Assembly: GCF_006345805.1 (NCBI RefSeq)
Contig: NC_042998.1
Coordinates: forward strand, 1,984,001-2,048,000
From: Octopus sinensis
Taxonomy: Eukaryota
Direction: 5' to 3'
DNA length: 64,000 nucleotides
Shown: piece by piece, positions 36,423 to 56,110 of the stretch
How the letters are laid out: every line of letters starts with the position of its first letter
Numbering within the stretch: the stretch's first letter is position 1
Notes under the pieces: generated by a model
Database searches by the model: none
Told to the model about the DNA's origin: nothing
Seen by the model: only the letters and a program-made list of their open reading frames with translations
Translations under genes and position numbers: made by a program

Positions 36423-36554
36423 CCCTAACTTTGACAGCATACATATATTTTCTTATTTGTTATGCCGTAATGTTTAGGGATAGTAAATGCACATGCTAGT
36501 AATCTACTGGTCATCTTCTAGTTGTTACTGGTGACTATTCAGTGTGCTACAGTT
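36423..36554 (+). ncRNA. H/ACA-like copy, lineage A
   Basis: H box ATAGTA 36480-36485; ACA 36549-36551. Confidence 0.82.
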
Positions 36555-37614
36555 TATTGATACATGGTAATATGACCGTGTACTGACTGCTATTGATCAT
36601 TGCCTTGTAGAATTTATTGTAACACCTCCATCACCTTTGTTGCATTATTTTATTTTTGGTGTGAGGAAGGGGCATCCAGCCCTACAAAACTATGTCTAAG
36701 CAGATAGAGAGCTTGGCAGTCTTGAGAGTTGCCAGCTGCAGTCAACCAATGCCAGCATGAAAATGGACTTATGTTGATTTATGTGAACTTAAAAGTTCAG
36801 TTTATTACAATAGACAGGGTGTGTAAAACTATGTTAGATACTCAGTGAATCAATCTTTCATCAAAGATGATTGTAGGATCCATGGAATGCATTTTTTGTG
36901 CTAGCTAACATTTTACTTTTTCTAAATGAATATTCCTTTATTTTCATTTCTTTATACTGAGAGTCTGGTAAATATTTTTGGTATTATATCCCTTTAATTT
37001 TCGTTTTAGTTTGAAGAAATTACTATTGCTTTCATATTTGTGTTGTTTATTAAAAAAGATTTGTTTGAAATCAAAATCTCTAAAATATTGCTGTTTCTAA
37101 AAGAAAAACACAGAGCTATATAATTGTAAAAAATCATTTGTATTCAAGGACATTTTAATAGAATATTTTGGGGTTCACATATAAATTCCTTGTCTTTAAA
37201 TCATACATATATTTTCATATTTTGGCTGAATGTTTTGAGATAATAAATGCATATTTCTTTAATGGTTTCATATGATATTTCATATATCTAGTGTGTTTGT
37301 CTCCTCAACCATAATTTTATTTAGATATTCAGAGAGGAGTATTTTTAAAAACCTATTCCTGCCTAATCTCATTTCTGTGTGTCCTGGCATCATTTCTTAA
37401 AAGTTTGGGATATTTACAATATTGTATCAAATGCTTCATTTGTGTGCATAAGTTTCTTTATTTTCAGTTTCTTTGATTTTCACTACCATTGCTTAAAGTG
37501 TCTTCTAGTGTAAAATTGAAATTATTTTCTTTCTATATTTTTAAAATGCTGAGAGATAAAAAAGGTTTGAATTTAAGTCCAGTTTGTGTCAGTCATTTAG
37601 TGTGTTGAGAGAAA

Positions 37615-37737
37615 CCCTGACCTTGAGAGCATACAAATATTTTGTTATGTCGTATAGTTTAGGGATATTAAATGCACTTACTAGTAATCTACTGGGTATA
37701 TTCTAGTTGTTACTGGTGACTACTCGGTGCTACATGT
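37615..37737 (+). ncRNA. H/ACA-like copy, lineage D
   Basis: H box ATATTA 37665-37670; ACA 37732-37734. Confidence 0.82.
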
Positions 37738-37887
37738 TTGTCGCCACATGGTAGTATTACCATGTATTGATCATTTTATTGTAAACGCTCTCTACTCTCA
37801 GATTATAGATTTTATATTGTGTAATATTTCTTTGTAAACTTGAAAATTCAGTTCATCACGATACAGAGTAGATGATTTTAAATATTC

Positions 37888-38267
37888 AGGAGTGGCTGTG
37901 TGGTAAATAGCTTGTTTACCAACTACATGGTTCCAGGTTCAGTCCCACTGCATGACACTTTGGGCAAGTGTCTTCTACCATAGCCTCGGCCCTTCCAAAG
38001 TGTTGTGAGTGGATTTGGTAGACGGAAACTGAAAAGAAGACTGTCATATATATGCATATGTCTGTGTGTCTGTCTCTTCCCCCCTATTCCCAACATCGCT
38101 TAACAACCAATGCTGGTGTGTTTACGTCCCTGTAACTTAGCGCTTCAGCAAAAGAGACCGATAGAATAGGTACTAGGCTTAGGGAGAATAAGTCCTAGTC
38201 GATTTGCTCGACTAAAGGTGGTGCTCCAGCATGGCCATGGTTAAATGACTGGAGCAAATAAAAGAAT
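37888..38267 (+). mobile_element. tRNA-derived SINE, family 1
   Basis: Head GGAGTGGCTGTGTGGT..GGTTCAGTCCC with A/B-box-like motifs; tail GGTGCTCCAGCATGG. Confidence 0.85.
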
Positions 38268-38567
38268 GAGTTAATCATTGTGATCCATGATTCATTGTCT
38301 TATTTAGTCTTTTTTTTTTTTTTTTTTTTTTTTTTTGCAAATGACTATTCCCTATTTTCATTTATTCTTCCTGCAGAGGGTCCAGTAAATATTGTAGAAT
38401 AGAAGAAATAAATTCCTTTTGCTGAACCACCTATCATAGATAATGAATAATGTGAAATGATTTAGTGCTCGTGTGGAACTTAAATTGTCATTCATTAGAA
38501 TAACAGATTTTGCTCTTATTAAAGTTTAAACCTTTTTACTAACATTGAAATTTGGTGGGGGGAAGAG

Positions 38568-38697
38568 CCCTAACCTTGACAGCATACATATATTTTCTTA
38601 TTTGTTATGCCGTAATGTTTAGGGATAGTAAATGCATATGCTAGTAATCTACTGGTCATCTTCTAGTTGTTACTGGTGACTACTCGGTGCTACATGC
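38568..38697 (+). ncRNA. H/ACA-like copy, lineage A
   Basis: H box ATAGTA 38625-38630; ACA 38692-38694. Confidence 0.82.
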
Positions 38698-38725
38698 TTG
38701 TCACTTCATAGTAATATTATTATGT

Positions 38726-38995
38726 CATCACGTGACCGACCAGTCCATCAGATGTAGTTACACATCGCTGGTCACAATGCGTTCGCATTGTTTTAGCCTT
38801 CGAATGACGCCACCCCGCTGGCTAAGCGAGCAGGCCAACTGACGAAAGAGTGGTGAAAGAGTACAGCAGGGATCACCACCCCTGCCGGAGCCTCGTGGAG
38901 CTTTTTAGGTGTTTTCGCTCAATAAACACAACGCCCGGTCTGGGAGTCACGACCGCGAGTCCGCTGCCCTAACCACTAGGCCATTGCGCCTCCAC
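38726..38995 (-). mobile_element. tRNA-derived SINE, family 3, inserted into the snoRNA array
   Basis: Head GGAGGCGCAATGGCCTAGTGGTTAGGG; 12-bp TSD atatta(t/c)tatgt at 38714-38725 and 38996-39007. Confidence 0.8.
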
Positions 38996-39314
38996 ATATT
39001 ACTATGTACTGACATGTATTTTATCATTTTCTTGTAACTCACTCCTCATCCACGGTTTATTCTAGCTTTTATATTGGGTGATTTGTTTTATTTAGCCTGG
39101 AAAATGTCTTTGTCAATGAATATCCCTTATTTTCATTTTTTATTCATGCTGATGGAGAGTCTAGTGAATATTTTTGTATTCCTTGTACTGAACATATCAT
39201 TATTTCTTTATCATTAGATAATAAATGAAAGGAAACAATGAAAATTGTCAGAAATGTATTTAAAAGACTTTTGCCCTTTGTTTTTCTAACAAATATTACA
39301 ATTTGGAAAAGAAG

Positions 39315-39442
39315 CCCTAACTTTGACAGCATACATATATTTTCTTATTTGTTTGCCGTAATGTTTAGGGATAGTAAATGCACATGCTAGTAATCTGTTG
39401 GTCATCTTCTATTGTTACTGGTATACATATTGTGGTACATGT
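39315..39442 (+). ncRNA. H/ACA-like copy, lineage A
   Basis: H box ATAGTA 39371-39376; ACA 39437-39439; one mismatch in the 3' basal stem. Confidence 0.72.
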
Positions 39443-39763
39443 GCTTTTATTCTGTTCTCAGCAGGTAATATTATGACCATCTGTATTAGTTATAATGTTA
39501 CCTGCAACAGATGCCTATCCTGTCATCAACACTTGTATGTTTCCAAATATAATGTTCCTCTTTGAACATGTTTTCATGGAGAACTGGATACAAATGGTGT
39601 CGTTTACATGAAAATGAAACTTAATCACAACTATCATACAATCTTGAGACATGAAGCCTGCATACATACATACACACACACACAACATACATATATATAC
39701 ACACACACACATACACTCACATTCTTTCCACTTGGTGTCAGTTATAAAGTTTGTTGAAAGAAG

Positions 39764-39890
39764 CCCTGACTTTGAGAGCATACAAAAATTTTGTTATGTT
39801 GTATTGTTAAGTGCTATTAAAAATGCACTTGCTAGTAATCTACTGGATATATTCTTGTTGTTATTGGTTACTATTCAATGTGCTACATGT
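39764..39890 (+). pseudogene. Degenerate H/ACA-like copy, lineage D
   Basis: 5' basal stem and H box are eroded; 3' hairpin and ACA (39885) are retained. Confidence 0.55.
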
Positions 39891-40243
39891 TAAGTTCATC
39901 ACAATACAGACTGAGTGAAATGAAATTAGATACTCCATGGATTAATTTTTTGAAAATCTCCATGTGATCCATGATTCGTGTCTTCTTAAGTCTGTAGAAT
40001 ATTTTTAGCTTCAAGGAATATCTCTTATTTTCATTCCTCATACTGAAAGAGGGTCTTGTAAATGTTTTTACAGAACACATCATTAGATAATTAAAAACAC
40101 GAAGTAATTTAGTGTGGAATTATAATTTAGTGATAGTTCATTTGCATTGCTATTTGGTGGGAATATATTCGAAAGAATTTGCTGTTATCAAAGGTTTTAA
40201 ACTGATTTTCAAACAAAAATTGAAATTTGGAAGGAAAAGAAAA

Positions 40244-40373
40244 CCCTAACTATGTCCCATACTTATATTTTCTTATTTGTTATGCCGTGTGGTCAGGGAC
40301 AGTAAATGCACATGCTAGTAATCTACTGGCTATGATTTAATTGTTACTGGTATACACTAACTGTGCTACATGT
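40244..40373 (+). ncRNA. H/ACA-like copy, lineage B
   Basis: H box ACAGTA 40299-40304; ACA 40368-40370. Confidence 0.75.
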
Positions 40374-41077
40374 ATGTTTATTCTGTTGCCATCAGTATTG
40401 GTTTATTATTGAATCTTCATTATTTTTCATTGTCGTTTTTTGTTTGCTTTTCTATGTTATCATGCTTCCAGTAGGTGTTTTTGGGGCAGTGTTTTGTGGT
40501 GCTAACCCCTGTAGTTGCTGTCTAAAAGCTTTATATTGCATGAATTTATCATACTCATCCACGTTTTAACATCTTTTCCATGCCTGCATGGATTAGATAC
40601 AGTTCATCATTTCTACAAGAGATGCCTGTCCAGTAATCAACACATGCCTGTTTCCAAATATATTTCTCTCTCAGTTTATTATAGTTTTTATATTGGGTAA
40701 TTTCTCTTTGTAATATTTAAGTTCATCACATTAGAGACTGAGTATAATGAAATTAGATACTCTATGGATTAATTTTTTGAAAAGCATCGTGTGATCCATG
40801 ATTAACCATATTTAGTCTAGGATATTTTTAGCTTCAATAAATATCTCTTATTATACTGATAGAGGGTCTTGTAAATATTTTTGAATAGAAGAAATAGATT
40901 TCTTCTACAGAACACATTAGATAATAAAAAATATGAAGTAATTTAGTGTGGAATTATAATTTAGTGATAATTCATTTGCATTGCTATTTGGTAGGAATAT
41001 ACTTGGAAGAATTTGCTGTTATCAAAGGTTTTAAACTGTTTTTCCAACAAATATTGAAATTTGGAAGGAAAAGAAAA

Positions 41078-41207
41078 CCCTAACTATGTCCCATACTTAT
41101 ATTTTCTTATTTGTTATGCCGTGTGGTCAGGGACAGTAAATGCACATGCTAGTAATCTACTGGCTATGATTTAATTGTTACTGGTATACACTAACTGTGC
41201 TACATGT
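41078..41207 (+). ncRNA. H/ACA-like copy, lineage B
   Basis: Core identical to the copy at 40244. Confidence 0.75.
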
Positions 41208-41508
41208 TTGTTTATTCTGTTGCCATCAGTATTGGTTTATTATTGAATCTTCATTATTTTTCATTGTCGTTTTTTGTTTGCTTTTCTATGTTATCATGCT
41301 TCCAATATGTGTTTTTGGGGCAGTGTTTTGTGGTGCTAACCCCTGTAGTTGCTGTCTAAAAGCTTTATATTGCATGAATTTATCATACTCATCCACGTTT
41401 TAACTTTTTTTCCATGCCTGCATGGATTAGATAAAGTTCATCATAGCAGAATATAATTGAAACTCATGAAGCGTGTATTTTGGTCAGAAATATAGTAACG
41501 AAAGGGCT

Positions 41509-42112
41509 TGTAGCGAACTTAGTGAGCGAATATCTTCTCTTGTACTTTCGGGGTACAAGAAAGCAATCACTAGCCGTTGCTTTAATAATCCAGAATTCTA
41601 CCAGTCAGAAACAACAAGACGCAGACGTAAAATATATATATATACTACTTTATTCTCTTTCTTGGTAACAATAACAATAAGTGGTTATCTGATGTCCTTG
41701 GTTCGGGGCGCGCAAGGCTGAAAGTTAATCGATTGTAATATTTACAATATTCAGCCGCTAAAACCAGAACGGGTTCAAGATGGCGTCGAACAGGGAGACG
41801 ATGTTGGTCTGCAACAATCTGGTTAAAGGCCTTTTGGTAAGGACTGCTAGAAGCAAGTTCGAACGGAGAGAAAATATGCGTGACCGCCTCCTTCAGTCGC
41901 AGCTGTCCCAAGTCCCCGCTGACTGCTGCCAGTGGTCAAACGTTCTACGACCCCCTTGCCTCGGCTAACTGCTACGTAGGCAAAAGGGTTCTTCTTCCGG
42001 TGCTTCGCGCATGCGCGAGAGGGCCCTTCCTCTCTCTGCCTTGGTAAAGGCACCAACACGCGCGAAATACAAATGGATGGTGCGCTAGCGCGCCGTTGTA
42101 ATATCACTTGCA
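41509..42112 (-). mobile_element. Solo LTR (Gypsy-like)
   Basis: TG...CA termini with short inverted ends, 4-bp TSD GGCT, GC-rich end at 42112, AATAAA on the minus strand. Units lacking it show a single GGCT. Confidence 0.8.
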
Positions 42113-42348
42113 GGCTAAAGAAGTGGCTACTGATTTCACTTGAGTATTAATTCTTAGTCCTATGATAACTGTGAATGAAAGAACAAACTCTCTTTCATCA
42201 TTAAGATATCCTTGAATGCTTCATCCGCAATATGAAGCCATCGAATGTTAATCTGCAACTAAAATTGTCAATCATTAGAATAAGAGATTTTGCTCTTAAG
42301 TTTTCAACTTTTTCTGACAAATATTGAAATTTGGTGGGGGAGAAAAAC

Positions 42349-42474
42349 CCCTAACTTTTGACAGCATGCATATATTTTCTTATTTGTTATGCCGTAATGT
42401 TTAGGGATAGTAAATGCACATGCATCTACTGGTTATATTCTAATTGTTACTGGTACATATACTGTGCTACATGT
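42349..42474 (+). ncRNA. H/ACA-like copy, lineage C (5-nt deletion in 3' hairpin)
   Basis: H box ATAGTA 42407-42412; ACA 42469-42471. Confidence 0.7.
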
Positions 42475-43126
42475 GTTGTTTTACTTTATTCTATTGTCAG
42501 CAAGTAATATTATGACCATCTGCATTGGTTTATTCTAGAATCTCTCTTTTTTGTTCATCATTTTTATGTCTTTTCCATGTTGTCATGATTTCAATGGAAA
42601 TTTTTTCAGCAGTTTTTTCTGGTACTAACCCTTGTAGTTGCTGTCAGGAAGCTTTTTATTGCATGAATTTGTCCTATTTTGCAGACCCATGTTTGCATGG
42701 GTCCTGCAAAATTACATTGGCACAAATTTTCTACAGCTTCACCGATTTCCAAATAGATATTTTTCTATCTCATAGTACATACAAGAATGGCTTTCATTTC
42801 TTTAATGGTGTCATACCACTTTCTATTGGGCTGCTGTATTTTTCATGCATCTGTTTGGGAAAACTGCTCTTCAAAATCTTATCTCATTTTTGTGAGGGTC
42901 TTGGCAGCATATAAGTCAGTTATAAAATTTGTTGAAAAATCCCTGACTTTGAGAGCATAAGGATATTGTGTTGTATAGTTTAGAGATAAGTGTAAGAGGT
43001 TGGGTCTGGCAAGTTTGAATATAGAAGAGCTAGAATATTTGAACTAGATGTCTAATGCTAAATTACATACATACACACATACTAAACCACGTACTAACTG
43101 TTACTTTCTCAGATGCAGCATGGAAT

Positions 43127-43177
43127 TTTGTCAGTGAACAGGTCGTGCTCTCAGAGCGACGAAAATATTTTGGCAAA
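43127..43177 (+). ncRNA. Minimal type I hammerhead ribozyme motif, G3:C8 variant
   Basis: UUUGUCA-GUGAACA-G-GUCGU(loop)GCGAC-GAAA-AUAU-UU-UGGCAAA; palindromic stem III AAUAUU; predicted cleavage after 43170. Confidence 0.7.
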
Positions 43178-43446
43178 TTAAATTTAAATGTTGAAGTGAA
43201 TCTAACGGTTTTTGTGTGTTTCTTATAAACACCTTCCATGCTGCAATTGTTTTAAAAGATCATTTTGAAATAATAATTTCACCTACTAAACATTTAGATG
43301 ATAAATGATATGAAATAATTTAGAAATAGTGTAGATCTGAAGTGTATACTGATATTCATCTGCATTGCCTTTCATTGGAAATGTACTTAAAAGATTTTGC
43401 TAAGTTTTAAACTGTTTTTCTAACAGAAGTTGAAGTTGGGGAGAAG

Positions 43447-43578
43447 CCCTGACAATGAACCATACATATATTTATATATATATGTTGTGCCGTGCGTTCA
43501 GGGACAGTAAGTGCACATGCTAGTAATCGACTGGCTATGATCTAATTGTTACTGGTATACACTAACTGTGCTACATGT
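43447..43578 (+). ncRNA. H/ACA-like copy, lineage E
   Basis: Basal stem CCCTGA/TCAGGG (compensatory change); H box ACAGTA 43504-43509; ACA 43573-43575. Confidence 0.75.
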
Positions 43579-44227
43579 ATGTTTATTCTGTTGCCATCAG
43601 TATTGGTTTATTATTGAATCTTCATTATTTTTCATTGTCGTCTTTTGTTTGCTTTTCTATGTTATCATGCTTCCAGTAGGTGTTTTTGGGGCAGTGTTTT
43701 GTGGTGCTAACCCCTGTAGTTGCTGTCTAAAGGCTTTATATTGCATGAATTTATCATACTCATCCACGTTTTAACATCTTTTCCATGCCTGCATGGATTA
43801 GATACAGTTCATCATTTCTACAAGAGATGCCTGTCCAGTAATCAACACATGCCTGTTTCCAAATATATTTCTCTCTCAGTTTATTATAGTTTTTATATTG
43901 GGTAATTTCTCTTTGTAATATTTAAGTTCATCACATTAGAGACTGAGTATAATGAAATTAGATAGTCTAGGATATTTTTAGCTTCAATAAATATCTCTTA
44001 TTATACTGATAGAGGGTCTTGTAAATATTTTTGAATAGAAGAAATAGATTTCTTCTACAGAACACATTAGATAATAAAAAATATGATGTAATTTAGTGTG
44101 GAATTATAATTTAGTGATAATTCATTTGCATTGCTATTTGGTAGGAATATACTTGGAAGAATTTGCTGTTATCAAAGGTTTTAAACTGTTTTTCCAACAA
44201 ATATTGAAATTTGGAAGGAAAAGAAAA

Positions 44228-44357
44228 CCCTAACTATGTCCCATGCTTATATTTTCTTATTTGTTATGCCGTGTGGTCAGGGACAGTAAATGCACATGCT
44301 AGTAATCTACTGGCTATGATTTAATTGTTACTGGTATACACTAACTGTGCTACATGT
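44228..44357 (+). ncRNA. H/ACA-like copy, lineage B
   Basis: Higher-order-repeat copy with both boxes intact. Confidence 0.75.
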
Positions 44358-44890
44358 TTGTTTATTCTGTTGCCATCAGTATTGGTTTATTATTGAATGT
44401 TCATTATTTTTCATTGTCGTTTTTTGTTTGCTTTTCTATGTTATCATGCTTCCAATATGTGCTTTTGGGGCAGTGTTTTGTGGTGCTAACCCCTGTAGTT
44501 GCTGTCTAAAAGCTTTATATTGCATGAATTTATCATACTCGTCCACGTTTTAACTTTTTTTCCATGCCTGCATGGATTAGATAAAGTTCATCATAGCAGA
44601 ATATAATTGAAATTCATGAGGGGTGTATTTTGGTCAGAAATATAGTAATGAAAGGGCTAAAGAAGTGGCTACTGATTTCACTTGAGTATTAATTCTTAGT
44701 CCTATGATAACTGTGAATGAAAGAACAAACTCTCTTTCATCATTAAGATATCCTTGAATGCTTCATCCGCAATATGAAGCCATCGAATGTTAATCTGCAA
44801 CTAAAATTGTCAATCATTAGAATAAGAGATTTTGCTCTTAAGTTTTCAACTTTTTCTGACAAATATTGAAATTTGGTGGGGGAGAAAAAC

Positions 44891-45016
44891 CCCTAACTTT
44901 TGACAGCATGCATATATTTTCTTATTTGTTATGCCGTAATGTTTAGGGATAGTAAATGCACATGCATCTACTGGTTATATTCTAATTGTTACTGGTACAT
45001 ATACTGTGCTACATGT
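44891..45016 (+). ncRNA. H/ACA-like copy, lineage C
   Basis: Higher-order-repeat copy with both boxes intact. Confidence 0.7.
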
Positions 45017-45667: not shown

Positions 45668-45717
45668 TTTGTCAGTGAACAGGTCGTGCTCTCAGAGCGA
45701 CGAAAATATTTGGCAAA
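45668..45717 (+). ncRNA. Hammerhead G3:C8 motif lacking one U at the cleavage site
   Basis: As 43127 but GAAAAUAUUUGGC (three U instead of four); either a real lesion or a homopolymer error. Confidence 0.5.
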
Positions 45718-47485: not shown

Positions 47486-47611
47486 CCCTAACTTTTGACA
47501 GCATGCATATATTTTCTTATTTGTTATGCCGTAATGTTTAGGGATAGTAAATGCACATGCATCTACTGGTTATATTCTAATTGTTACTGGTACATATACT
47601 GTGCTACATGT
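47486..47611 (+). ncRNA. H/ACA-like copy, lineage C
   Basis: Higher-order-repeat copy with both boxes intact. Confidence 0.7.
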
Positions 47612-48262
47612 GTTGTTTTACTTTATTCTATTGTCAGCAAGTAATATTATGACCATCTGCATTGGTTTATTCTAGAATCTCTCTTTTTTGTTCATCATTT
47701 TTATGTCTTTTCCATGTTGTCATGATTTCAATGGAAATTTTTTCAGCAGTTTTTTCTGGTACTAACCCTTGTAGTTGCTGTCAGGAAGCTTTTTATTGCA
47801 TGAATTTGTCCTATTTTGCAGACCCATGTTTGCATGGGTCCTGCAAAATTACATTGGCACAAATTTTCTACAGCTTCACCGATTTCCAAATAGATATTTT
47901 TCTATCTCATAGTACATACAAGAATGGCTTTCATTTCTTTAATGGTGTCATACCACTTTCTATTGGGCTGCTGTATTTTTCATGCATCTGTTTGGGAAAA
48001 CTGCTCTTCAAAATCTTCTCTCATTTTTGTGAGGGTTTTGGCAGCATATAAGTCAGTTATAAAATTTGTTGAAAAATCCCTGACTTTGAGAGCATAAGGA
48101 TATTGTGTTGTATAGTTTAGAGATAAGTGTAAGAGGTTGGGTCTGGCAAGTTTGAATATAAAAGAGCTAGAATATTTGAACTAGATGTCTAATGCTAAAT
48201 TACATACATACACACATACATACCACGTACTAACTGTTACTTTCTCAGATGCAGCATGGAAT

Positions 48263-48313
48263 TTTGTCAGTGAACAGGTCGTGCTCTCAGAGCGACGAAA
48301 ATATTTTGGCAAA
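48263..48313 (+). ncRNA. Hammerhead G3:C8 motif
   Basis: Identical to 43127-43177. Confidence 0.7.
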
Positions 48314-48581
48314 TTAAATTTAAATGTTGAAGTGAATCTAACGGTTTTGTGTGTTTCTTATAAACACCTTCCATGCTGCAATTGTTTTAAAAGATCATTT
48401 TGAAATAATAATTTCACCTACTAAACATTTAGATGATAAATGATATGAAATAATTTAGAAATAGTGTAGATCTGAAGTGTAAACTGATATTCATCTGCAT
48501 TGCCTTTCATTGGAAATGTACTTAAAAGATTTTGCTAAGTTTTAAACTGTTTTTCTAACAGAAGTTGAAGTTGGGGAGAAG

Positions 48582-48711
48582 CCCTGACAATGAACCATAC
48601 ATATATTTATATATATGTTGTGCCGTGCGTTCAGGGACAGTAAGTGCACATGCTAGTAATCGACTGGCTATGATCTAATTGTTACTGGTATACACTAACT
48701 GTGCTACATGT
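48582..48711 (+). ncRNA. H/ACA-like copy, lineage E
   Basis: Higher-order-repeat copy with both boxes intact. Confidence 0.75.
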
Positions 48712-49420
48712 ATGTTTATTCTGTTGCCATCAGTATTGGTTTATTATTGAATCTTCATTATTTTTCATTGTCGTCTTTTGTTTGCTTTTCTATGTTATCA
48801 TGCTTCCAGTAGGTGTTTTTGGGGCAGTGTTTTGTGGTGCTAACCCCTGTAGTTGCTGTCTAAAAGCTTTATATTGCATGAATTTATCATACTCATCCAC
48901 GTTTTAACATCTTTTCCATGCCTGCATGGATTAGATACAGTTCATCATTTCTACAAGAGATGCCTGTCCAGTAATCAACACATGCCTGTTTCCAAATATA
49001 TTTCTCTCTCAGTTTATTATAGTTTTTATATTGGGTAATTTCTCTTTGTAATATTTAAGTTCATCACATTAGAGACTGAGTATAATGAAATTAGATACTC
49101 TATGGATTAATTTTTTGAAAAGCATCATGTGATCCATGATTAACCATATTTAGTCTAGGATATTTTTAGCTTCAATAAATATCTCTTATTATACTGATAG
49201 AGGGTCTTGTAAATATTTTTGAATAGAAGAAATAGATTTCTTCTACAGAACACATCATTAGATAATAAAAATATGATGTAATTTAGTGTGGAATTAATAT
49301 AATTTAGTGATAATTCATTTGCATTGCTATTTGGTAGGAATATACTTGGAAGAATTTGCTGTTATCAAAGGTTTTAAACTGTTTTTCCAACAAATATTGA
49401 AATTTGGAAGGAAAAGAAAA

Positions 49421-49550
49421 CCCTAACTATGTCCCATGCTTATATTTTCTTATTTGTTATGCCGTGTGGTCAGGGACAGTAAATGCACATGCTAGTAATC
49501 TACTGGCTATGATTTAATTGTTACTGGTATACACTAACTGTGCTACATGT
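49421..49550 (+). ncRNA. H/ACA-like copy, lineage B
   Basis: Higher-order-repeat copy with both boxes intact. Confidence 0.75.
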
Positions 49551-49851
49551 TTGTTTATTCTGTTGCCATCAGTATTGGTTTATTATTGAATCTTCATTAT
49601 TTTTCATTGTCGTTTTTTGTTTGCTTTTCTATGTTATCATGCTTCCAATATGTGCTTTTGGGGCAGTGTTTTGTGGTGCTAACCCCTGTAGTTGCTGTCT
49701 AAAAGCTTTATATTGCATGAATTTATCATACTCATCCACGTTTTAACTTTTTTTCCATGCCTGCATGGATTAGATAAAGTTCATCATAGCAGAATATAAT
49801 TGAAACTCATGAGGGGTGTATTTTGGTCAGAAATATAGTAACGAAAGGGCT

Positions 49852-50456
49852 TGTAACGAACTTAGTGAGCGAATATCTTCTCTTGTACTTTCGGGGTACA
49901 AGAAAGCAATCACTAGCCGTTGCTTTAATAATCCAGAATTCTACCAGTCAGAAACAACAAGACGCAGATGTAAAATATATATATATACTACTTTATTCTC
50001 TTTCTTGGTAACAATAACGATAAGTGGTTATCTGATGTCCTTGGTTCGGGGCGCGCAAGGCTGAAAGTTAATCGATTGTAATATTTACAATATTCAGCCG
50101 CTAAAACCAGAACGGGTTCAAGATGGCGTCGAACAGGGAGACGATGTTGGTCTGCAACAATCTGGTTAAAGGCCTTTTGGTAAGGACTGCTAGAAGCAAG
50201 TTCGAACGGAGAGAAAATATGCGTGACCGCCTCCTTCAGTCGCAGCTGTCCCAAGTCCCCGCTGACTGCTGCCAGTGGTCAAACGTTCTACGACCCCCTT
50301 GCCTCGGCTAACTGCTACGTAGGCAAAAGGGTTCTTCTTCCAGTGCTTCGCGCATGCGCGAGAGGGCCCTTCCTCTCTCTGCCTTGGTAAAGGCACCAAC
50401 ACGCGCGAAATACAAATGGACGGTGCGCGAGCGCGCGCCGTTATAGGATCACTACA
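49852..50456 (-). mobile_element. Solo LTR, duplicate within the array
   Basis: TGTAACGA...TCACTACA, GGCT TSD, same insertion site as the copy at 41509. Confidence 0.8.
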
Positions 50457-50692
50457 GGCTAAAGAAGTGGCTACTGATTTCACTTGAGTATTAATTCTTA
50501 GTCCTATGATAACTGTGAATGAAAGAACAAACTCTCTTTCATCATTAAGATATCCTTGAATGCTTCATCCGCAATATGAAGCCATCGAATGTTAATCTGG
50601 AACTAAAATTGTCAATCATTAGAATAAGAGATTTTGCTCTTAAGTTTTCAACTTTTTCTGACAAATATTGAAATTTGGTGGGGGAGAAAAAC

Positions 50693-50818
50693 CCCTAACT
50701 TTTGACAGCATGCATATATTTTCTTATTTGTTATGCCGTAATGTTTAGGGATAGTAAATGCACATGCATCTACTGGTTATATTCTAATTGTTACTGGTAC
50801 ATATACTGTGCTACATGT
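50693..50818 (+). ncRNA. H/ACA-like copy, lineage C
   Basis: Higher-order-repeat copy with both boxes intact. Confidence 0.7.
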
Positions 50819-51469
50819 GTTGTTTTACTTTATTCTATTGTCAGCAAGTAATATTATGACCATCTGCATTGGTTTATTCTAGAATCTCTCTTTTTTGTTC
50901 ATCATTTTTATGTCTTTTCCATGTTGTCATGATTTCAATGGAAATTTTTTCAGCAGTTTTTTCTGGTACTAACCCTTGTAGTTGCTGTCAGGAAGCTTTT
51001 TATTGCATGAATTTGTCCTATTTTGCAGACCCATGTTTGCATGGGTCCTGCAAAATTACATTGGCACAAATTTTCTACAGCTTCACCGATTTCCAAATAG
51101 ATATTTTTCTATCTCATAGTACATACAAGAATGGCTTTCATTTCTTTAATGGTGTCATACCACTTTCTATTGGGCTGCTGTATTTTTCATGCATCTGTTT
51201 GGGAAAACTGCTCTTCAAAATCTTCTCTCATTTTTGTGAGGGTTTTGGCAGCATATAAGTCAGTTATAAAATTTGTTGAAAAAACCCTGACTTTGAGAGC
51301 ATAAGGATATTGTGTTGTATAGTTTAGAGATAAGTGTAAGAGGTTGGGTCTGGCAAGTTTGAATATAAAAGAGCTAGAATATTTGAACTAGATGTCTAAT
51401 GCTAAATTACATACATACACACATACATACCACGTACTAACTGTTACTTTCTCAGATGCAGCATGGAAT

Positions 51470-51520
51470 TTTGTCAGTGAACAGGTCGTGCTCTCAGAGC
51501 GACGAAAATATTTTGGCAAA
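51470..51520 (+). ncRNA. Hammerhead G3:C8 motif
   Basis: Identical to 43127-43177. Confidence 0.7.
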
Positions 51521-51789
51521 TTAAATTTAAATGTTGAAGTGAATCTAACGGTTTTTGTGTGTTTCTTATAAACACCTTCCATGCTGCAATTGTTTTAAAA
51601 GATCATTTTGAAATAATAATTTCACCTACTAAACATTTAGATGATAAATGATATGAAATAATTTAGAAATAGTGTAGATCTGAAGTGTAAACTGATATTC
51701 ATCTGCATTGCCTTTCATTGGAAATGTACTTAAAAGATTTTGCTAAGTTTTAAACTGTTTTTCTAACAGAAGTTGAAGTTGGGGAGAAG

Positions 51790-51921
51790 CCCTGACAATG
51801 AACCATACATATATTTATATATATATGTTGTGCCGTGCGTTCAGGGACAGTAAGTGCACATGCTAGTAATCGACTGGCTATGATCTAATTGTTACTGGTA
51901 TACACTAACTGTGCTACATGT
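51790..51921 (+). ncRNA. H/ACA-like copy, lineage E
   Basis: Higher-order-repeat copy with both boxes intact. Confidence 0.75.
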
Positions 51922-53205
51922 ATGTTTATTCTGTTGCCATCAGTATTGGTTTATTATTGAATCTTCATTATTTTTCATTGTCGTCTTTTGTTTGCTTTTC
52001 TATGTTATCATGCTTCCAGTAGGTGTTTTTGGGGCAGTGTTTTGTGGTGCTAACCCCTGTAGTTGCTGTCTAAAAGCTTTATATTGCATGAATTTATCAT
52101 ACTCGTCCACGTTTTAACATCTTTTCCATGCCTGCATGGATTAGATAAAGTTCATTGTGGCAGATTTTCTACAAGGCAGGCCTGTCCAGTAATCGACACT
52201 TGCCTGTTTCCAAATATATTGCTCTTTGGCTGGACGTGTGTCAGTACATGAAAACATATGCACAAAGTTGTAAGGATATCTATGCATATAAAGCTGAGAA
52301 AGTATGTATCACTAAAACTCTAGAACTACTCAGCCGATTTCATTTAAATTTTACACATACACTGCATAGGGTCTATAGAGTGTCATGGGCTAAAATAATT
52401 TTCCACCTTCTTGCCTAATGCGAGTCTCGAGCAATCTTTTAGCCTGTTTCAGTATTATGAGTCAAAAGTGAAACAATAACATCTCTATTGTAATGTGAGA
52501 TACTAGTTTCATATCATATACATAGTGAAACTATTATCTCACATTACATATATACATACATACTTGCATACGTATACATATGTGTGTGTACATATGTATA
52601 TATATATATATATACACACACACACATATATAAAATATATGAAATATTACTATCTAAAACACCATACAGTAGGCATTTATCTTCCTAGTCCTATGCAAAA
52701 TTAGGCATTTGCCCCATGACCGTTATGAAGGACTAAGCACAATCTCTTTGTAAAATATTTTTTTTAATAATAGGGTTCATATCTTGAATGTACACAGTAT
52801 TTTCCAGAAAACATTTATTGGTCATATGTTGGAATTGGGTGTTTCACCTACATTGTTTATACAAGAAAGGCTTTCATTTCTTCAATGGCTTCATACCTTT
52901 TTCTGTTGCAGTGCTGTCTCTTCTAATTATCTTCTATGTTTGACTCTTCAACCATAATTTCCTGTTATTGTTCAAAGAGAGAAATATTTTTTAAAATTTA
53001 CTTCTGCGTTCTCTTTTTTTGTGTGTCCTGGTATCATTTATTAAAACTCTGGAATATTTATATCCTATCAGCTGCTTCCTTTGTTTGCATAAATTACTTT
53101 ACTTTCACTTTCATTACCATTACTTCAAGTCTCCTCTACAGTAAAAGAATATTTTCTCTCTCTGTTTTCAACATGCTGAAAGAAAAATACAATCAAGGAA
53201 AGAAA

Positions 53206-53323
53206 CCCTGACCTTGAGAGCATACAAATATTTTGTTATGTCGTATAGTTTAGGGATACTAAATGCACTTGCTAGTAATCTACTGGGTATATTCTAGTTG
53301 TTACTACTCACTGTGCTACATGT
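53206..53323 (+). ncRNA. H/ACA-like copy, lineage D (deletion in 3' hairpin)
   Basis: H box ATACTA 53256-53261; ACA 53318-53320. Confidence 0.7.
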
Positions 53324-53891
53324 TAGTATTACTATGTACTGATACATGTTGATTGTTTTCTTGTGGATTTTATTGCTTCTTTATTATAGTTTTTATATTG
53401 ACTAATTTCTTTTTGTAAACTTTAAATTTTTGATTTTGTTACAATACGTAGGGTGTGTAACAACAAACTAGATACTCAATGGAAAATCTTTTGAAGATGG
53501 TACTGGCATCCATGGGCCGTCTTGTGTTAGCTAATATTTTCTATTTAACTCGTAGAATATTTTCTCTAAATGAATACTTCTTTCTTTTCATTTCTTGTTT
53601 ATCCTGTGAGAGAGTCTTATAAATATATTTGATATTATGTCCTTTTAATTTTCATTTTAGTTTAAAGAAGTGGCTACTGATTTCACTAGAATATTCTTAG
53701 TCCTATGATAACTGTGAATGAAAAAACAAACTCTCTTTCATCATTAAGATATCCTTGAATGCTTCATCCGCAATATGAAGCCATCGAATGTTAATCTGGA
53801 ACTAAAATTGTCAATCATTAGAATAAGAGATTTTGCTCTTAAGTTTTCAACTTTTTCTGACAAATATTGAAATTTGGTGGGGGAGAAAAAC

Positions 53892-54017
53892 CCCTAACTT
53901 TTGACAGCATGCATATATTTTCTTATTTGTTATGCCGTAATGTTTAGGGATAGTAAATGCACATGCATCTACTGGTTATATTCTAATTGTTACTGGTACA
54001 TATACTGTGCTACATGT
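53892..54017 (+). ncRNA. H/ACA-like copy, lineage C
   Basis: Higher-order-repeat copy with both boxes intact. Confidence 0.7.
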
Positions 54018-54667
54018 GTTGTTTTATTTTATTCTATTGTCAGCAAGTAATATTATGACCATCTGCATTGGTTTATTCTAGAATCTCTTTTTTTGTTCAT
54101 CATTTTTATGTCTTTTCCATGTTGTCATGATTTCAATGGAAATTTTTTCAGCAGTTTTTTCTGGTACTAACCCTTGTAGTTGCTGTCAGGAAGCTTTTTA
54201 TTGCATGAATTTGTCCTATTTTGCAGACCCATGTTTGCATGGGTCCTGCAAAATTACATTGGCACAAATTTTCTACAGCTTCACCGATTTCCAAATAGAT
54301 ATTTTTCTATCTCATAGTACATACAAGAATGGCTTTCATTTCTTTAATGGTGTCATACCACTTTCTATTGGGCTGCTGTATTTTTCATGCATCTGTTTGG
54401 GAAAACTGCTCTTCAAAATCTTCTCTCATTTTTGTGAGGGTTTTGGCAGCATATAAGTCAGTTATAAAATTTGTTGAAAAATCCCTGACTTTGAGAGCAT
54501 AAGGATATTGTGTTGTATAGTTTAGAGATAAGTGTAAGAGGTTGGGTCTGGCAAGTTTGAATATAAAAGAGCTAGAATATTTGAACTAGATGTCTAATGC
54601 TAAATTACATACATACACACATACATACCACGTACTAACTGTTACTTTCTCAGATGCAGCATGGAAT

Positions 54668-54718
54668 TTTGTCAGTGAACAGGTCGTGCTCTCAGAGCGA
54701 CGAAAATATTTTGGCAAA
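54668..54718 (+). ncRNA. Hammerhead G3:C8 motif
   Basis: Identical to 43127-43177. Confidence 0.7.
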
Positions 54719-54986
54719 TTAAATTTAAATGTTGAAGTGAATCTAACGGTTTTGTGTGTTTCTTATAAACACCTTCCATGCTGCAATTGTTTTAAAAGAT
54801 CATTTTGAAATAATAATTTCACCTACTAAACATTTAGATGATAAATGATATGAAATAATTTAGAAATAGTGTAGATCTGAAGTGTAAACTGATATTCATC
54901 TGCATTGCCTTTCATTGGAAATGTACTTAAAAGATTTTGCTAAGTTTTAAACTGTTTTTCTAACAGAAGTTGAAGTTGGGGAGAAG

Positions 54987-55118
54987 CCCTGACAATGAAC
55001 CATACATATATTTATATATATATGTTGTGCCGTGCGTTCAGGGACAGTAAGTGCACATGCTAGTAATCGACTGGCTATGATCTAATTGTTACTGGTATAC
55101 ACTAACTGTGCTACATGT
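54987..55118 (+). ncRNA. H/ACA-like copy, lineage E
   Basis: Last higher-order-repeat copy; the array is truncated about 17 nt downstream. Confidence 0.75.
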
Positions 55119-55983
55119 ATGTTTATTCTGTTGCCAACAACTAATAATATGCCTGTCTCTCATAATCATCGTTTAATGTCTATGTTCCTTGCTGGCATTG
55201 TCTGGAGAGTTCAGCAGGGTCTGATGGATCCAAAGATGGTATCATCCACCAGTGCCTGCTTGGGCTTGGATGTCCTTCTCAACACTAACCCTGTTACAAT
55301 GTATACTGGGTGCTTTCCCACACCACAAGCAACCATGCAGCTCACAAGAGTACAAAACTTGGGCAAGAGCAGGTCTTTGTTGTAGAGGAGCTCCAATTGC
55401 TCCTCATTGAAGGGAGAGTGAGAATGAATCAGTATTTACGACAAAGCGATAGATATTGGTGATGCGGTATCCAGGTGGTACTTAGTAGGGTGAGGTGAGT
55501 GGCGATAGAGAAACTAGGTGTTTGTGTAGGGTAGCAGTTTGCAAGAGTTTGTTGGGGACAATATCTGCAAAAAATTACTTTTTAAAATCAATGTCTGCCT
55601 TATCTCGTTTTTGTGGGGGTCCTTGCATCAGTCCTCAACACTCAGAAATTTATTTACAATTTAATTTTCACGGCCAGTGTTTCAAATGTCATCTAGCATA
55701 AAATTTAAGACATTTTCCTTCAATATTTTCAACATGCCGAAAAAGAAAACATTCAAATTTACCTTAAACCCAAATCGAGTCAAATGTAGCAGAAGTCATT
55801 CACTATGAATGTGTGAGGCAGAAAAAAATTACTCAAACTGTCAAATGTTTATGTGCCAAATTGTAAAATGATGCTTGAATTGTCAATAATGAGAAATTTC
55901 CATGAAGATTTAAAAGGTTGAGCCTAGTTATGAGATTCATTGTGATGGCTTCAATGGTTAACTTATTTGAATTTTGAAAGAGA

Positions 55984-56110
55984 TCCTGACTTTGACAGCA
56001 TACACTTATTTTCTTATTTGTTCTGCCGTAGTGCTCAGGGATATTAAATGTACGTGTTAGTAATCCACTAACTTAGTTATTTACTGGTGATTACTAACTG
56101 TGCAACAATT
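55984..56110 (+). ncRNA. H/ACA-like copy, divergent lineage A
   Basis: Stems TCCTGA/TCAGGG and TGTAC/GTGCA; H box ATATTA 56041-56046; ACA 56105-56107. Confidence 0.75.

What the first reader, a model, noticed from the sequence alone, without database searches (positions are those of the whole stretch)
36423..56110. Massive tandem amplification of one box H/ACA snoRNA family inside a single eIF3j intron
Seen: 22 complete and 5 half copies of a 118-132-nt hairpin-H-hairpin-ACA element, all sense to eIF3j, in intron 5. The three A's of the H box are fixed while N positions vary (ATAGTA, ATATTA, ACAGTA, ATACTA); only the degenerate copy at 39764 departs from this. ACA sits at the expected terminal position. 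The basal stem covaries: CCCTAA/TTAGGG, CCCTGA/TTAGGG (wobble), CCCTGA/TCAGGG (full compensation). The base of the upper 5' stem lies 14-16 nt from the H box. Known: this is the dyskerin-guide H/ACA architecture; translation-factor genes are common snoRNA hosts; small intronic H/ACA clusters exist in Drosophila. Inference: a cluster of this size in one intron is unusual, resembles the mammalian SNORD115/116 expansions, and needs a way to release many RNAs from one lariat.
Basis: partly seen in the sequence, partly recalled or inferred. Interest (0 to 1): 0.9.

Follow-up and report, generated by a model that had tools for sequence, protein, structure and literature searches.

The report
Octopod intronic H/ACA snoRNA gene array
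One 22-kb intron of the translation-factor gene eIF3j in an octopus-like cephalopod carries 22 same-strand copies of a previously uncatalogued ~130-nt box H/ACA small nucleolar RNA. The same intron of the paper nautilus Argonauta holds six, so this is a real, conserved and unusually large example of a known gene arrangement, not a new kind of system.

Summary
There are 22 full copies (118-132 nt), 5 half copies and 2 further relics. All lie on the + strand inside eIF3j intron 5 (35115-57380), and none lies elsewhere in the window.

Each full copy has a hairpin, an H box (ANANNA, 21/22), a second hairpin and an ACA (22/22). Conservation rises about 5 nt before the first stem and falls to background 3-6 nt after ACA, while flanks are at the random baseline.

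The orthologous intron of Argonauta hians carries six sense copies. Cores are 81% identical to the window's and the flanks are unalignable. Four non-cephalopod molluscs have none, and Rfam 15 has no matching family.

Weaker points:
- Covariation is thin: all four combinations occur at the cited pair.
- The 3' hairpin has no consistent open pocket.
- Guide strands are the most variable part within the array.
- The only rRNA match (9 bp, 18S 5' end) is not significant (p about 0.07-0.12).
- Four of the ten variants (12 of 22 copies) fold poorly.
- Expression is untested.

Best reading: a lineage-specific H/ACA snoRNA family expanded by nested tandem duplication. It is an oversized 'intronic gene cluster' of the kind known from Drosophila and rice. 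It is a new member of a known kind, of moderate interest.

The parts
35006..35114 (+). eIF3j exon 5 (...AEKLRRRQLQEESDLKLAKEAF-G); GT donor at 35115
   Evidence: tblastn and translation
35115..57380 (+). eIF3j intron 5 (22,266 bp), host of the whole array
   Evidence: splice sites read; position conserved in Argonauta and four other molluscs
57381..57481 (+). eIF3j exon 6 (G-LVEGAGIDQMSPESEEDFIKFEEALKEKITTFE)
35140..35270 (+). Degenerate relic copy 25 nt after the exon-5 donor. It keeps TTTAGGG-ATAGTA but has no 5' strand of the basal stem.
   Evidence: CM 21.9 bits, E 0.025; fold z +0.21
36423..36554 (+). Full copy, variant A (ancestral-type pocket CUUUGA/UAAUGU), H box ATAGTA
   Evidence: 158.8 bits; fold z -2.9
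37183..37256 (+). Degenerate relic (5' hairpin only)
   Evidence: 23.4 bits, E 0.012; fold z +0.38
37615..37737 (+). Full copy, variant B (pocket CCUUGA/UAUAGU), H box ATATTA
   Evidence: 136.8 bits; z -2.86
38568..38697 (+). Full copy, variant A
   Evidence: 153.1 bits; z -2.12
39315..39442 (+). Full copy, variant A with lesions (GTGG instead of GTGC in the basal 3' stem)
   Evidence: 132.6 bits; z -0.86
39764..39890 (+). Degenerate full-length copy (variant B-like): H box lost, basal stem broken
   Evidence: 118.8 bits; no ANANNA; z -0.46
40244..40373 (+). Full copy, variant C (pocket CUAUGU/UGUGGU; A.C mismatch in the basal stem)
   Evidence: 140.9 bits; z -0.56
41078..41207 (+). Full copy, variant C
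   Evidence: 141.2 bits
42349..42474 (+). Full copy, variant E (ancestral pocket; 5-nt deletion in the 3' hairpin); start of higher-order unit 1
   Evidence: 138.4 bits; z -1.26
42937..43016 (+). Half copy (5' hairpin remnant, no H or ACA)
   Evidence: 25.8 bits; z +0.49
43447..43578 (+). Full copy, variant D (pocket CAAUGA/UGCGUU; basal stem CCCUGA/UCAGGG)
   Evidence: 132.8 bits; z -3.05
44228..44357 (+). Full copy, variant C
   Evidence: 138.8 bits
44891..45016 (+). Full copy, variant E; higher-order unit 2
45478..45557 (+). Half copy
45987..46118 (+). Full copy, variant D
46824..46953 (+). Full copy, variant C
47486..47611 (+). Full copy, variant E; higher-order unit 3
48074..48153 (+). 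Half copy
48582..48711 (+). Full copy, variant D (2-nt shorter TA loop)
49421..49550 (+). Full copy, variant C
50693..50818 (+). Full copy, variant E; higher-order unit 4
51281..51360 (+). Half copy
51790..51921 (+). Full copy, variant D
53206..53323 (+). Full copy, variant B (H box ATACTA; shortened 3' hairpin)
   Evidence: 127.8 bits; z -2.10
53892..54017 (+). Full copy, variant E; higher-order unit 5
54479..54558 (+). Half copy
54987..55118 (+). Full copy, variant D
55984..56110 (+). Full copy, variant F (most divergent; pocket CUUUGA/UAGUGC; apical helix ACUAA/UUAGU compensates for ACUGG/CUAGU)
   Evidence: 118.7 bits; z -3.37

Best explanation
Intron 5 of eIF3j holds a lineage-specific (octopod, possibly wider cephalopod) family of box H/ACA snoRNA genes. 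The family was multiplied by nested tandem duplication.

Proposed mechanism (inferred from established H/ACA biogenesis, not shown here):
1. Each unit is transcribed as part of the eIF3j pre-mRNA.
2. The dyskerin/NOP10/NHP2 (later GAR1) proteins assemble co-transcriptionally on the two hairpins and the H and ACA boxes.
3. After splicing and debranching, the 150-1300-nt spacers are removed by endonucleolytic cuts plus exonucleolytic trimming.
4. Trimming stops at the protein-protected ends, leaving RNAs of about 120-135 nt that end 3 nt after ACA.

Guide function. The ancestral guide is the 5'-hairpin pocket CUUUGA...UAAUGU. It is kept in variants A and E and in all Argonauta copies, and in variant F with a changed 3' strand (UAGUGC) that still pairs. 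Its best candidate target is a uridine near the 5' end of 18S rRNA, in the context UUG-U-C-UCAAAG. Variants B, C and D keep the protein-binding scaffold but have changed pockets. They are either orphans with new targets or decaying duplicates.

The five 2.5-3.2-kb higher-order units (E, half copy, D, then C, B or F) are very recent duplicates.
For: Shown directly:
- 22 full copies, all sense, confined to one intron.
- Hairpin-hinge-hairpin-tail folds with z of -2 to -3.4 for variants A, B, D, F and most Argonauta copies.
- H box in 21/22 copies and ACA in 22/22, plus 6/6 in Argonauta.
- 93.4% of structure cells are paired, against 27-44% when partners are slid. No shuffle out of 500 reaches the observed pairing or covariation score.
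- Position-by-position identity jumps from about 0.3 to 0.76 at -5 and returns to about 0.3 by ACA+6.
- Cores are 0.84 identical within the window and 0.81 between species, against 0.48-0.53 for flanks; the shuffled baseline is 0.46.
- The orthologous Argonauta hians intron (about 4.1 kb) has six sense copies at 135-147 bits.
- Compensatory series occur in Argonauta helix X: CTTGGTGAA/TTCACCAAG, then G.U, then CTTAGTGAA/TTCACTAAG. In variant F the apical helix ACTAA/TTAGT replaces ACTGG/CTAGT.
- Stems and boxes are the best-conserved parts: P1 0.89, P3 0.93, ACA 1.0.
- The 5' hairpin of variant A is closer to Argonauta (0.87) than to paralogs B and D (0.74-0.76).
- Flank homology decays in steps of 99.6%, 84% and then none, which indicates serial tandem duplication.
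- A true dispersed repeat in the same window occurs in both orientations and everywhere, unlike this family.

Precedent: intronic gene clusters of snoRNAs exist in rice and Drosophila (PMC2780460; the Huang et al. 2004 title is cited in PMC5932544).
Against: - There is no RNA evidence of any kind.
- There is no hit to any Rfam 15 family at gathering score. Only inconsistent weak hits appear at E > 0.4.
- Double-sided covariation is scarce, 2 of 28 pairs. RNAalifold gives a weak consensus of -8 kcal/mol with no compensatory pair.
- Guide strands are among the least conserved parts within the window (0.70-0.72; the 3' strand of the 3' hairpin is 0.44). This is the opposite of classic rRNA guides.
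- The 9-bp 18S match is expected for 7-12% of random pockets.
- No conserved rRNA or snRNA match exists for the B or C pockets or for any version of the 3' pocket; D gives only a non-significant 9-bp (6+3) match.
- Variants C, E, 39315 and 39764 fold no better than shuffles, z -0.46 to -1.26.
- The high core identity within Argonauta (0.96) next to random flanks could owe as much to gene conversion as to selection.
Confidence: 0.75

Rival explanations
1. Mostly dead array. One or a few ancestral-type copies are working snoRNA genes. The bulk of the 22 copies, especially variants C, E, 39315 and 39764 and all half copies, are neutral by-products of segmental duplication. These are not matured or have no target.
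For: - Poor fold z-scores for C (-0.56), E (-1.26), 39315 (-0.86) and 39764 (-0.46). The relics have z > 0.
- Variant C has an A.C mismatch in the basal stem, and variant E has a 5-nt deletion in the 3' hairpin.
- Pockets have diverged.
- In the recent higher-order units, cores vary no less than spacers: 1 indel in 258 columns against 11 sites in 1048 columns.
Against: - Even variants C, D and E keep intact H and ACA boxes and the P1 and P3 stems.
- C and D cores are 90% identical while their upstream flanks are 69% identical, which suggests constraint after the older duplication.
- Argonauta independently keeps six near-intact copies.
Confidence: 0.4
2. A functionless tandem repeat (satellite-like) whose monomer happens to resemble an H/ACA RNA. 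The core would be kept similar by gene conversion alone.
For: - Very high core identity, including loops, within Argonauta (0.96) next to random flanks.
- Signatures in the 3' hairpin are shared by all copies of one species, as concerted evolution would give.
- No target or Rfam homolog was found.
Against: - Conservation boundaries coincide with the expected RNA ends: 5 nt before P1 and ACA+3 to +6.
- Boxes and stems are more conserved than loops and pocket strands.
- Compensatory changes occur in three helices.
- The array keeps the same intron and the same strand in two octopod lineages whose intron sequence is otherwise unalignable.
Confidence: 0.08
3. Copies of a mobile element, either a SINE or retroposed snoRNA copies, that accumulated in this intron.
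For: There are sharp similarity boundaries with unrelated flanks for many pairs.
Against: - All 29 copies and relics are on one strand and in one intron. None lies in the other 42 kb of the window or the other 13 kb of the Argonauta locus.
- No A-rich tail follows ACANNN.
- Neighbouring units share decayed flank homology, so whole units were duplicated.
- A genuine SINE-like repeat in the window shows the opposite pattern, with at least 8 copies on both strands and dispersed.
- There was no match in viral contigs.
Confidence: 0.03
4. A cluster of microRNA or other hairpin precursors rather than H/ACA RNAs.
For: Weak Rfam hits of single hairpins to miRNA models appear: mir-16 at E 1.5, mir-725 at E 0.47, mir-4003 at E 9. 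Cephalopods have many novel miRNAs (own knowledge).
Against: - The hairpins have large internal loops (about 6 x 6 nt) or long asymmetric bulges, not a continuous stem of about 22 bp.
- The miRNA model that hits is different for each copy.
- The invariant single-stranded ANANNA and ACA motifs have no role in miRNA precursors.
Confidence: 0.04
5. The copy number is inflated by assembly. The five near-identical 2.5-3.2-kb units could be an over-expanded or mis-joined repeat.
For: The units are 96.7-99.6% identical. Arrays like this are hard to assemble, and no reads are available here.
Against: - The units differ by SNPs, indels and a 641-bp insertion present in only two places.
- There are no Ns in the window.
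- Ten distinct variants, and an independent six-copy array in Argonauta, exist regardless.
Confidence: 0.12

Closest known systems
[quoted passage not shown]
   Same: Several H/ACA snoRNA genes, often isoforms made by tandem duplication, lie in the same orientation inside a single intron of a host gene and depend on host transcription (PMC2780460; Huang et al. 2004 J Mol Biol 341:669, cited in PMC5932544).
   Different: Here there are 22 full copies of one family in one 22-kb intron of a protein-coding gene. By my own recollection, which I did not check here, that is several-fold more than the Drosophila clusters. The guide pockets are diversified, and a parallel array exists in a second octopod. 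Release of individual RNAs is not shown here.
Mammalian SNORD115/SNORD116 (and SNORD113/114) arrays
   Same: Dozens of tandem paralogs of one snoRNA family arose by unit duplication, and many are orphans without an rRNA target.
   Different: Those are box C/D RNAs, arranged one per intron of a repeated non-coding host with an exon in every unit, and imprinted. Here the RNAs are H/ACA and all lie in one intron. No conserved splice sites were found in the spacers.
sno-lncRNAs, including the H/ACA-ended SLERT
   Same: When two snoRNAs sit in one excised intron, the snoRNPs block exonucleases and the sequence between them can survive as a long RNA with snoRNA ends (PMC11028025). The structural precondition is met many times over here.
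   Different: Nothing shows that such RNAs accumulate here. SLERT arises by exon skipping between two introns, each carrying one snoRNA.
Curated H/ACA families in Rfam 15 (for example SNORA75, SNORA57, snoR137, SNORA46)
   Same: The overall architecture aligns end to end with some models. SNORA75 aligns over positions 1-134/134 with both hairpins and the ACA in register.
   Different: Scores are 11-14 bits against gathering scores of 40-80 (E 1.3-9.2). The hits differ from copy to copy, so there is no demonstrable homology.

Membership tests
Box H/ACA snoRNA (dyskerin/Cbf5 guide RNA) | Hairpin-hinge-hairpin-tail secondary structure | tested here: met
   Minimum-free-energy folds of 14 of 18 distinct sequences give two hairpins with a single-stranded hinge and tail. 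93.4% of cells are paired, against 27-44% for slid controls.
Box H/ACA snoRNA (dyskerin/Cbf5 guide RNA) | H box ANANNA in the hinge | tested here: met
   Present in 21/22 window copies and 6/6 Argonauta copies. The three A positions are fixed and the N positions vary.
Box H/ACA snoRNA (dyskerin/Cbf5 guide RNA) | ACA box directly after the 3' hairpin, 3 nt from the mature 3' end | tested here: met
   ACA is invariant in 28/28 copies, 1 nt after stem P3. Conservation decays to background within 3-6 nt after it. The mature 3' end itself cannot be tested without RNA data.
Box H/ACA snoRNA (dyskerin/Cbf5 guide RNA) | Pseudouridylation pocket whose top lies 14-16 nt upstream of the H or ACA box | tested here: inconclusive
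   5' hairpin: 14 nt if the upper stem starts at G20-C50, or 12 nt if the C18-G52 pair forms. 3' hairpin: 15 nt only in the helix-Z fold. Competing folds leave a one-sided bulge or, in Argonauta, close the pocket with a 9-bp helix.
Box H/ACA snoRNA (dyskerin/Cbf5 guide RNA) | Bipartite complementarity of the pocket to an rRNA or snRNA around a target uridine | tested here: inconclusive
   The ancestral pocket pairs 3+6 bp with 18S UUG-UC-UCAAAG in 9-10 of 10 eukaryotic rDNA units. However, 7-12% of random pockets do as well. B and C have no conserved match and D only a non-significant 9-bp one; the 3' pockets have none. No cephalopod rRNA was available.
Box H/ACA snoRNA (dyskerin/Cbf5 guide RNA) | Stable RNA of about 130 nt bound by dyskerin, NOP10, NHP2 and GAR1 | not testable with these tools
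   No expression or interaction data are accessible.
Box H/ACA snoRNA (dyskerin/Cbf5 guide RNA) | Homology to a curated H/ACA family | tested here: not met
   There are no Rfam 15 hits at gathering score in the window or in five mollusc loci. Only inconsistent sub-threshold hits appear. This bears on which family it belongs to, not on the class.
Intronic snoRNA gene cluster (Drosophila/rice type) | Two or more snoRNA genes within one intron, sense to the host | tested here: met
   22 copies in the window and 6 in Argonauta lie in the orthologous eIF3j intron, all sense.
Intronic snoRNA gene cluster (Drosophila/rice type) | Individual snoRNAs released from the common intron | not testable with these tools
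   This needs northern blots or RNA sequencing.
SNORD115/116-type array | Box C/D RNAs, one per intron, with an exon in every repeat unit | tested here: not met
   The RNA class is H/ACA. A 3'ss/5'ss-like motif (ttctcagCAG|GTAATA) is intact only at about 39459-39470. It is degenerate in the other units and absent in Argonauta.
SINE / retroposed snoRNA copies | Dispersed insertions on both strands with A-tails and target-site duplications | tested here: not met
   The family occupies one strand and one intron and has no A-tails. This contrasts with the SINE-like repeat 37880-38290.
microRNA precursor cluster | Near-continuous stem of about 22 bp per hairpin | tested here: not met
   The hairpins carry 5-8-nt internal loops or 9-11-nt bulges.

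The most novel reading that the evidence does not exclude
The array is more than a redundant set of rRNA guides. Because more than 20 H/ACA particles would sit on one excised intron, exonucleases could stall at internal particles. That would yield a ladder of H/ACA-ended long RNAs of the SLERT type, up to about 19.7 kb. In addition or instead, the paralogs with rewritten pockets (variants B, C, D) could guide lineage-specific pseudouridines in non-ribosomal RNAs. This would be an expansion repeated in two octopod lineages, in a clade already known for heavy RNA-level regulation.
Probability: 0.15. Interest if true: 0.75.

Novelty: new member of a known kind. Interest (0 to 1): 0.45.

Why it matters
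Cephalopod snoRNAs are known almost only from Rfam homology scans. The giant-squid genome paper, for example, lists 41 H/ACA loci found that way (PMC6962438).

This locus adds a family that such scans miss. It shows that an H/ACA 'intronic gene cluster' can grow to more than 20 genes in a housekeeping host. It also offers a natural series of old, intermediate and very recent duplicates in which the protein-binding scaffold is kept while guide pockets change.

That makes it a convenient system for three questions:
- How are many snoRNAs freed from one lariat?
- Do snoRNA-ended long RNAs form?
- How do new guide specificities or orphan snoRNAs arise?

If only a few copies are active, it is simply a large, partly decaying gene cluster.

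Tried and rejected
1. Tandem Repeats Finder missed the array because units exceed its 500-nt period. The array was found by repeat families and profile search instead.
2. Rfam gave nothing at gathering score and only inconsistent noise in E-value mode.
3. RNAalifold on the mixed alignment gave a weak consensus and chose a different upper helix in the 3' hairpin. Constrained folds showed three mutually exclusive helices (Y+P5, X'+Z, X+Z) that cannot be resolved with two species.
4. Target search. I fetched 120 eukaryotic rDNA contigs with the single metagenome scan and scanned 10 complete units. Only the 18S 5'-end site came up for the ancestral pocket, and a shuffling control showed it is not significant.
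5. I could not confirm from the held literature that the matching human position (18S U34, from memory) is a known pseudouridine. It is left as an unverified lead.
6. Recursive splicing as the release mechanism. A juxtaposed 3'/5' splice-site motif follows the copy at 39442, but it is degenerate after the other copies and absent in Argonauta, so I rejected it.
7. Selection test on the five recent higher-order units was uninformative because there are too few differences. The raw Fisher p-value printed in that call is invalid, because one unit loses homology after 43596.
8. Orthologous introns of Lottia, Haliotis, Pecten and Mytilus gave no credible match even with filters off.
9. Looking up a 129-aa spacer ORF to find other assemblies of this locus found nothing on record.
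10. A viral-contig scan for the core motif gave 0 hits.
11. ARAGORN found no tRNA genes.

Full report
WHAT IS THERE

The window carries an eIF3j gene on the + strand.
- Exon 1 has its ATG at 21426.
- Further exons lie at about 21645-21719, 30012-30065, 33072-33161 and 35006-35114.
- Exon 6 is 57381-57481, and later exons run to about 59556.
- The intron between ...LKLAKEAF-G and G-LVEGAGIDQMSPE is therefore intron 5, at 35115-57380 (22,266 bp).

The closest protein in the database is eIF3j of Argonauta hians, 75% identical over my rough exon concatenation and 72-90% per exon. The window therefore comes from an octopod-like cephalopod other than Argonauta.

CHECKING THE OBSERVATION

A profile nhmmer search and a covariance model built from 18 distinct sequences agree.
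- There are 22 full-length copies scoring 119-159 bits.
- There are 5 half copies scoring 25.8 bits each.
- Two further relics lie at 35140-35270 and 37183-37256.
- Every one is on the + strand and inside intron 5, and nothing credible lies elsewhere in the 64 kb.

Core coordinates, taken from the first C of CCCU to ACA+3, run from 36423 to 56110 with lengths of 118-132 nt. The H box reads ATAGTA, ATATTA, ACAGTA or ATACTA in 21 of 22 copies, and only 39764 lacks it. ACA is present in all 22. Spacers are 321-1284 nt, and the window contains no Ns.

The copies fall into six variant groups:
- A: 3 copies.
- B: 3 copies, one of them degenerate.
- C: 5 copies.
- D: 5 copies.
- E: 5 copies.
- F: 1 copy.

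From 42349 onward they form five higher-order units of 2.5-3.2 kb. Each unit holds E, a half copy, D, and then C, B or F. The units are 96.7-99.6% identical but differ by SNPs, indels and a 641-bp insertion.

IS IT MORE THAN A REPEAT?

Three results say yes.

First, similarity is confined to the core. Among variant representatives, cores are 0.84 identical, while 130-nt flanks are 0.50-0.53 identical. The shuffled baseline is 0.46 +/- 0.13.

Second, the edges of conservation sit where a mature H/ACA RNA should begin and end. Anchored, ungapped pairwise identity is about 0.3 upstream and rises to 0.76 at position -5. It is 1.00 across GUGC-N-ACA and falls through 0.66, 0.57 and 0.46 to about 0.3 by ACA+6.

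Third, the family is conserved in another species. The orthologous intron of Argonauta hians is about 4.1 kb (locus L001, GCA_054771915.1). It holds six sense copies scoring 135-147 bits. Between species, cores are 0.81 identical and flanks are at baseline.

A useful internal contrast is the SINE-like repeat at 37880-38290. It has at least 8 copies on both strands scattered through the window, and one copy in the Argonauta locus. The H/ACA family behaves in the opposite way.

STRUCTURE

Most copies fold as hairpin, hinge (H box), hairpin and ACA tail. Fold z-scores are -2 to -3.4 for variants A, B, D and F and for most Argonauta copies.

On the 18-sequence alignment, 93.4% of cells in my 28-pair model are standard pairs, against 27-44% when partners are slid by 1-3 columns. 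No shuffle out of 500 reaches the observed pairing or covariation score.

Real compensatory evidence exists but is thin.
All four combinations therefore occur.
- Variant F changes the apical helix from ACUGG/CUAGU to ACUAA/UUAGU.
- In Argonauta, a 9-bp helix CUUGGUGAA/UUCACCAAG runs through G-C, G.U and A-U among copies.

The 5' hairpin has an internal loop of the right kind. Its top lies 14 nt from the H box, or 12 nt if one extra C-G pair forms.

The 3' hairpin is not a clean guide hairpin.
- The stem next to ACA (GCAC/GUGC) is nearly invariant.
- Above it, three mutually exclusive helices compete.
- A canonical 15-nt pocket appears in only one of these folds.
- In Argonauta the would-be pocket strands pair with each other.

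By region within the window, boxes and stems are best conserved: P1 0.89, P3 0.93, hinge 0.89, ACA 1.0. Pocket strands score 0.70-0.72. The 3' strand of the 3' hairpin is close to unconstrained at 0.44.

GUIDE FUNCTION

The pocket CUUUGA...UAAUGU is shared by variants A and E and by Argonauta copies; F keeps the 5' strand with UAGUGC as 3' strand. Over the 5' hairpin plus H box, variant A is closer to Argonauta (0.87) than to its neighbours B and D (0.74-0.76). The 3' hairpin, by contrast, is species-specific. Variant A therefore looks like the ancestral guide.

I fetched eukaryotic rDNA from metagenome contigs and scanned ten complete units. The ancestral pocket pairs 3+6 bp around a uridine in the universally conserved 18S 5' end, UUG-U-C-UCAAAG, in 9-10 of 10 units. 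From memory, this corresponds to human 18S U34, which I recall as pseudouridylated. I could not confirm that in the held literature.

A control shows that 7-12% of random or shuffled pockets find an equally good match to one of the 157 universally conserved U contexts. The match is therefore a lead, not evidence.

Pockets B and C and every version of the 3' pocket have no conserved rRNA match; D has only a non-significant 9-bp one. The species' own rRNA was not available.

HISTORY

Flank homology decays in steps.
- The higher-order units are 97-99.6% identical.
- The C and D units are about 84% identical.
- Older units share only a short upstream motif (...ATTGAAATTTGG...purine-rich) or nothing.

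Argonauta likewise has a recent 950-bp duplication carrying two copies, with flanks 90-94% identical. This is the signature of repeated tandem segmental duplication, not transposition.

All Argonauta copies share features absent from all window copies, and vice versa. Either each lineage expanded from few ancestral copies, or the arrays evolve in concert.

The orthologous intron measures about 0.4 kb in Lottia, 0.6 kb in Haliotis, 1.0 kb in Pecten and 5.6 kb in Mytilus. None of them holds a detectable relative, even with filters off.

HOW IT MOST LIKELY WORKS

The mechanism below is inferred from established H/ACA biogenesis.
1. The units are transcribed within eIF3j pre-mRNA.
2. H/ACA proteins assemble on each unit.
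3. After splicing and debranching, spacers are removed.
4. RNAs of about 120-135 nt ending at ACA+3 remain.

With many particles on one intron, exonucleases working from the ends cannot reach internal units. Either endonucleolytic cuts occur, as must happen in Drosophila and plant intronic clusters, or snoRNA-ended long RNAs accumulate. The latter is documented when two snoRNAs share an intron (PMC11028025).

A recursive-splicing solution was considered. A perfect juxtaposed 3'/5' splice motif follows the copy ending at 39442, but the motif is not conserved.

COMPARISON WITH WHAT IS KNOWN, AND VERDICT

Class membership in box H/ACA is met for every sequence-level criterion except a demonstrated target. 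There is no Rfam family for it.

[quoted passage not shown] 2004, cited in PMC5932544). It is not the SNORD115/116 layout.

What stands out is:
- the scale, with 22 genes in one intron of a coding gene;
- the parallel array in a second octopod;
- the pattern of a conserved scaffold with diverging pockets.

Four of the ten variants (12 of 22 copies) — C, E, 39315 and 39764 — fold poorly and may be decaying. Copy number in the near-identical part needs long reads.

I rate this a new member of a known kind, of moderate interest.

Noticed in passing
window 37880-38290 (also 63483-63824 +, 61321-61651 -, 16314-16459 -, 6271-6540 -, 13325-13458 +, 977-1052 -); L001 16583-16663: A SINE-like dispersed repeat of about 400 bp, 71-82% identical between copies, lies on both strands throughout the window and once in the Argonauta locus. 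One copy is inserted in a spacer of the array and is followed by a 27-nt T run (38310-38336).
   Followed up: partly
window 38730-39000 (-): A GC-rich insert in a spacer. Its reverse complement starts with a tRNA-like head (GGAGGCGCAATGGCCTAGTGGTTAGGGC...). It is probably a tRNA-derived SINE. It has a single copy in the window, and ARAGORN calls no tRNA.
   Followed up: partly
window 41470-42110 and 49816-50453: A 641-bp GC-richer insertion is present in only two units of the array, 98% identical to each other. It accounts for the longer (3.2-kb) higher-order units and carries overlapping 82-88-aa ORFs on both strands. Its nature is unknown.
   Followed up: no
window 39459-39470 (compare about 42498-42510 and 36566-36575): A juxtaposed 3'/5' splice-site motif of the recursive-splicing type (ttattctgttctcagCAG|GTAATATT) lies about 20 nt after the copy ending at 39442. 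It is degenerate after the other copies and absent in Argonauta.
   Followed up: yes
window, 10-35 nt upstream of many cores (for example 38541-38567, 40214-40243, 42320-42348); L001 upstream of 4 of 6 copies: There is a semi-conserved upstream motif: ATTGAAATTTGG plus a purine-rich run in the window, and ATGTTTTGGTAGAAT in Argonauta. Positions -5 to -2 are 0.60-0.77 identical across species. It could be a 5' leader of the RNA or a processing signal.
   Followed up: partly
   Followed up: yes
L001 9411-9440: Argonauta has a fragment matching only the 3' end of the element (CACTGAGTGTGCTACATATT), about 130 nt after its first full copy. It is a seventh, truncated copy.
   Followed up: partly
window cores versus L001 cores (alignment A1): Evolution is mosaic. 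The 5' hairpin of variant A is closer to Argonauta (0.87) than to window paralogs B and D (0.74-0.76). The 3' hairpin is more alike within a species (0.79-0.86) than between species (0.66). This suggests concerted evolution of the 3' domain.
   Followed up: partly
window 30609-30777 and 39661-39715: An (ACAT)n/(ACATACAC)n microsatellite of about 170 bp lies in eIF3j intron 3, and a CA-rich microsatellite lies in an array spacer.
   Followed up: no
L004 9227-9314 (+) and L005 13152-13241 (+): The covariance model gives very weak sense-strand hits (10.7 and 9.3 bits, E 2-5) just upstream of the 3' splice site of the orthologous intron in Pecten and Mytilus. No H/ACA features were visible on inspection, so these are probably chance.
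   Followed up: yes
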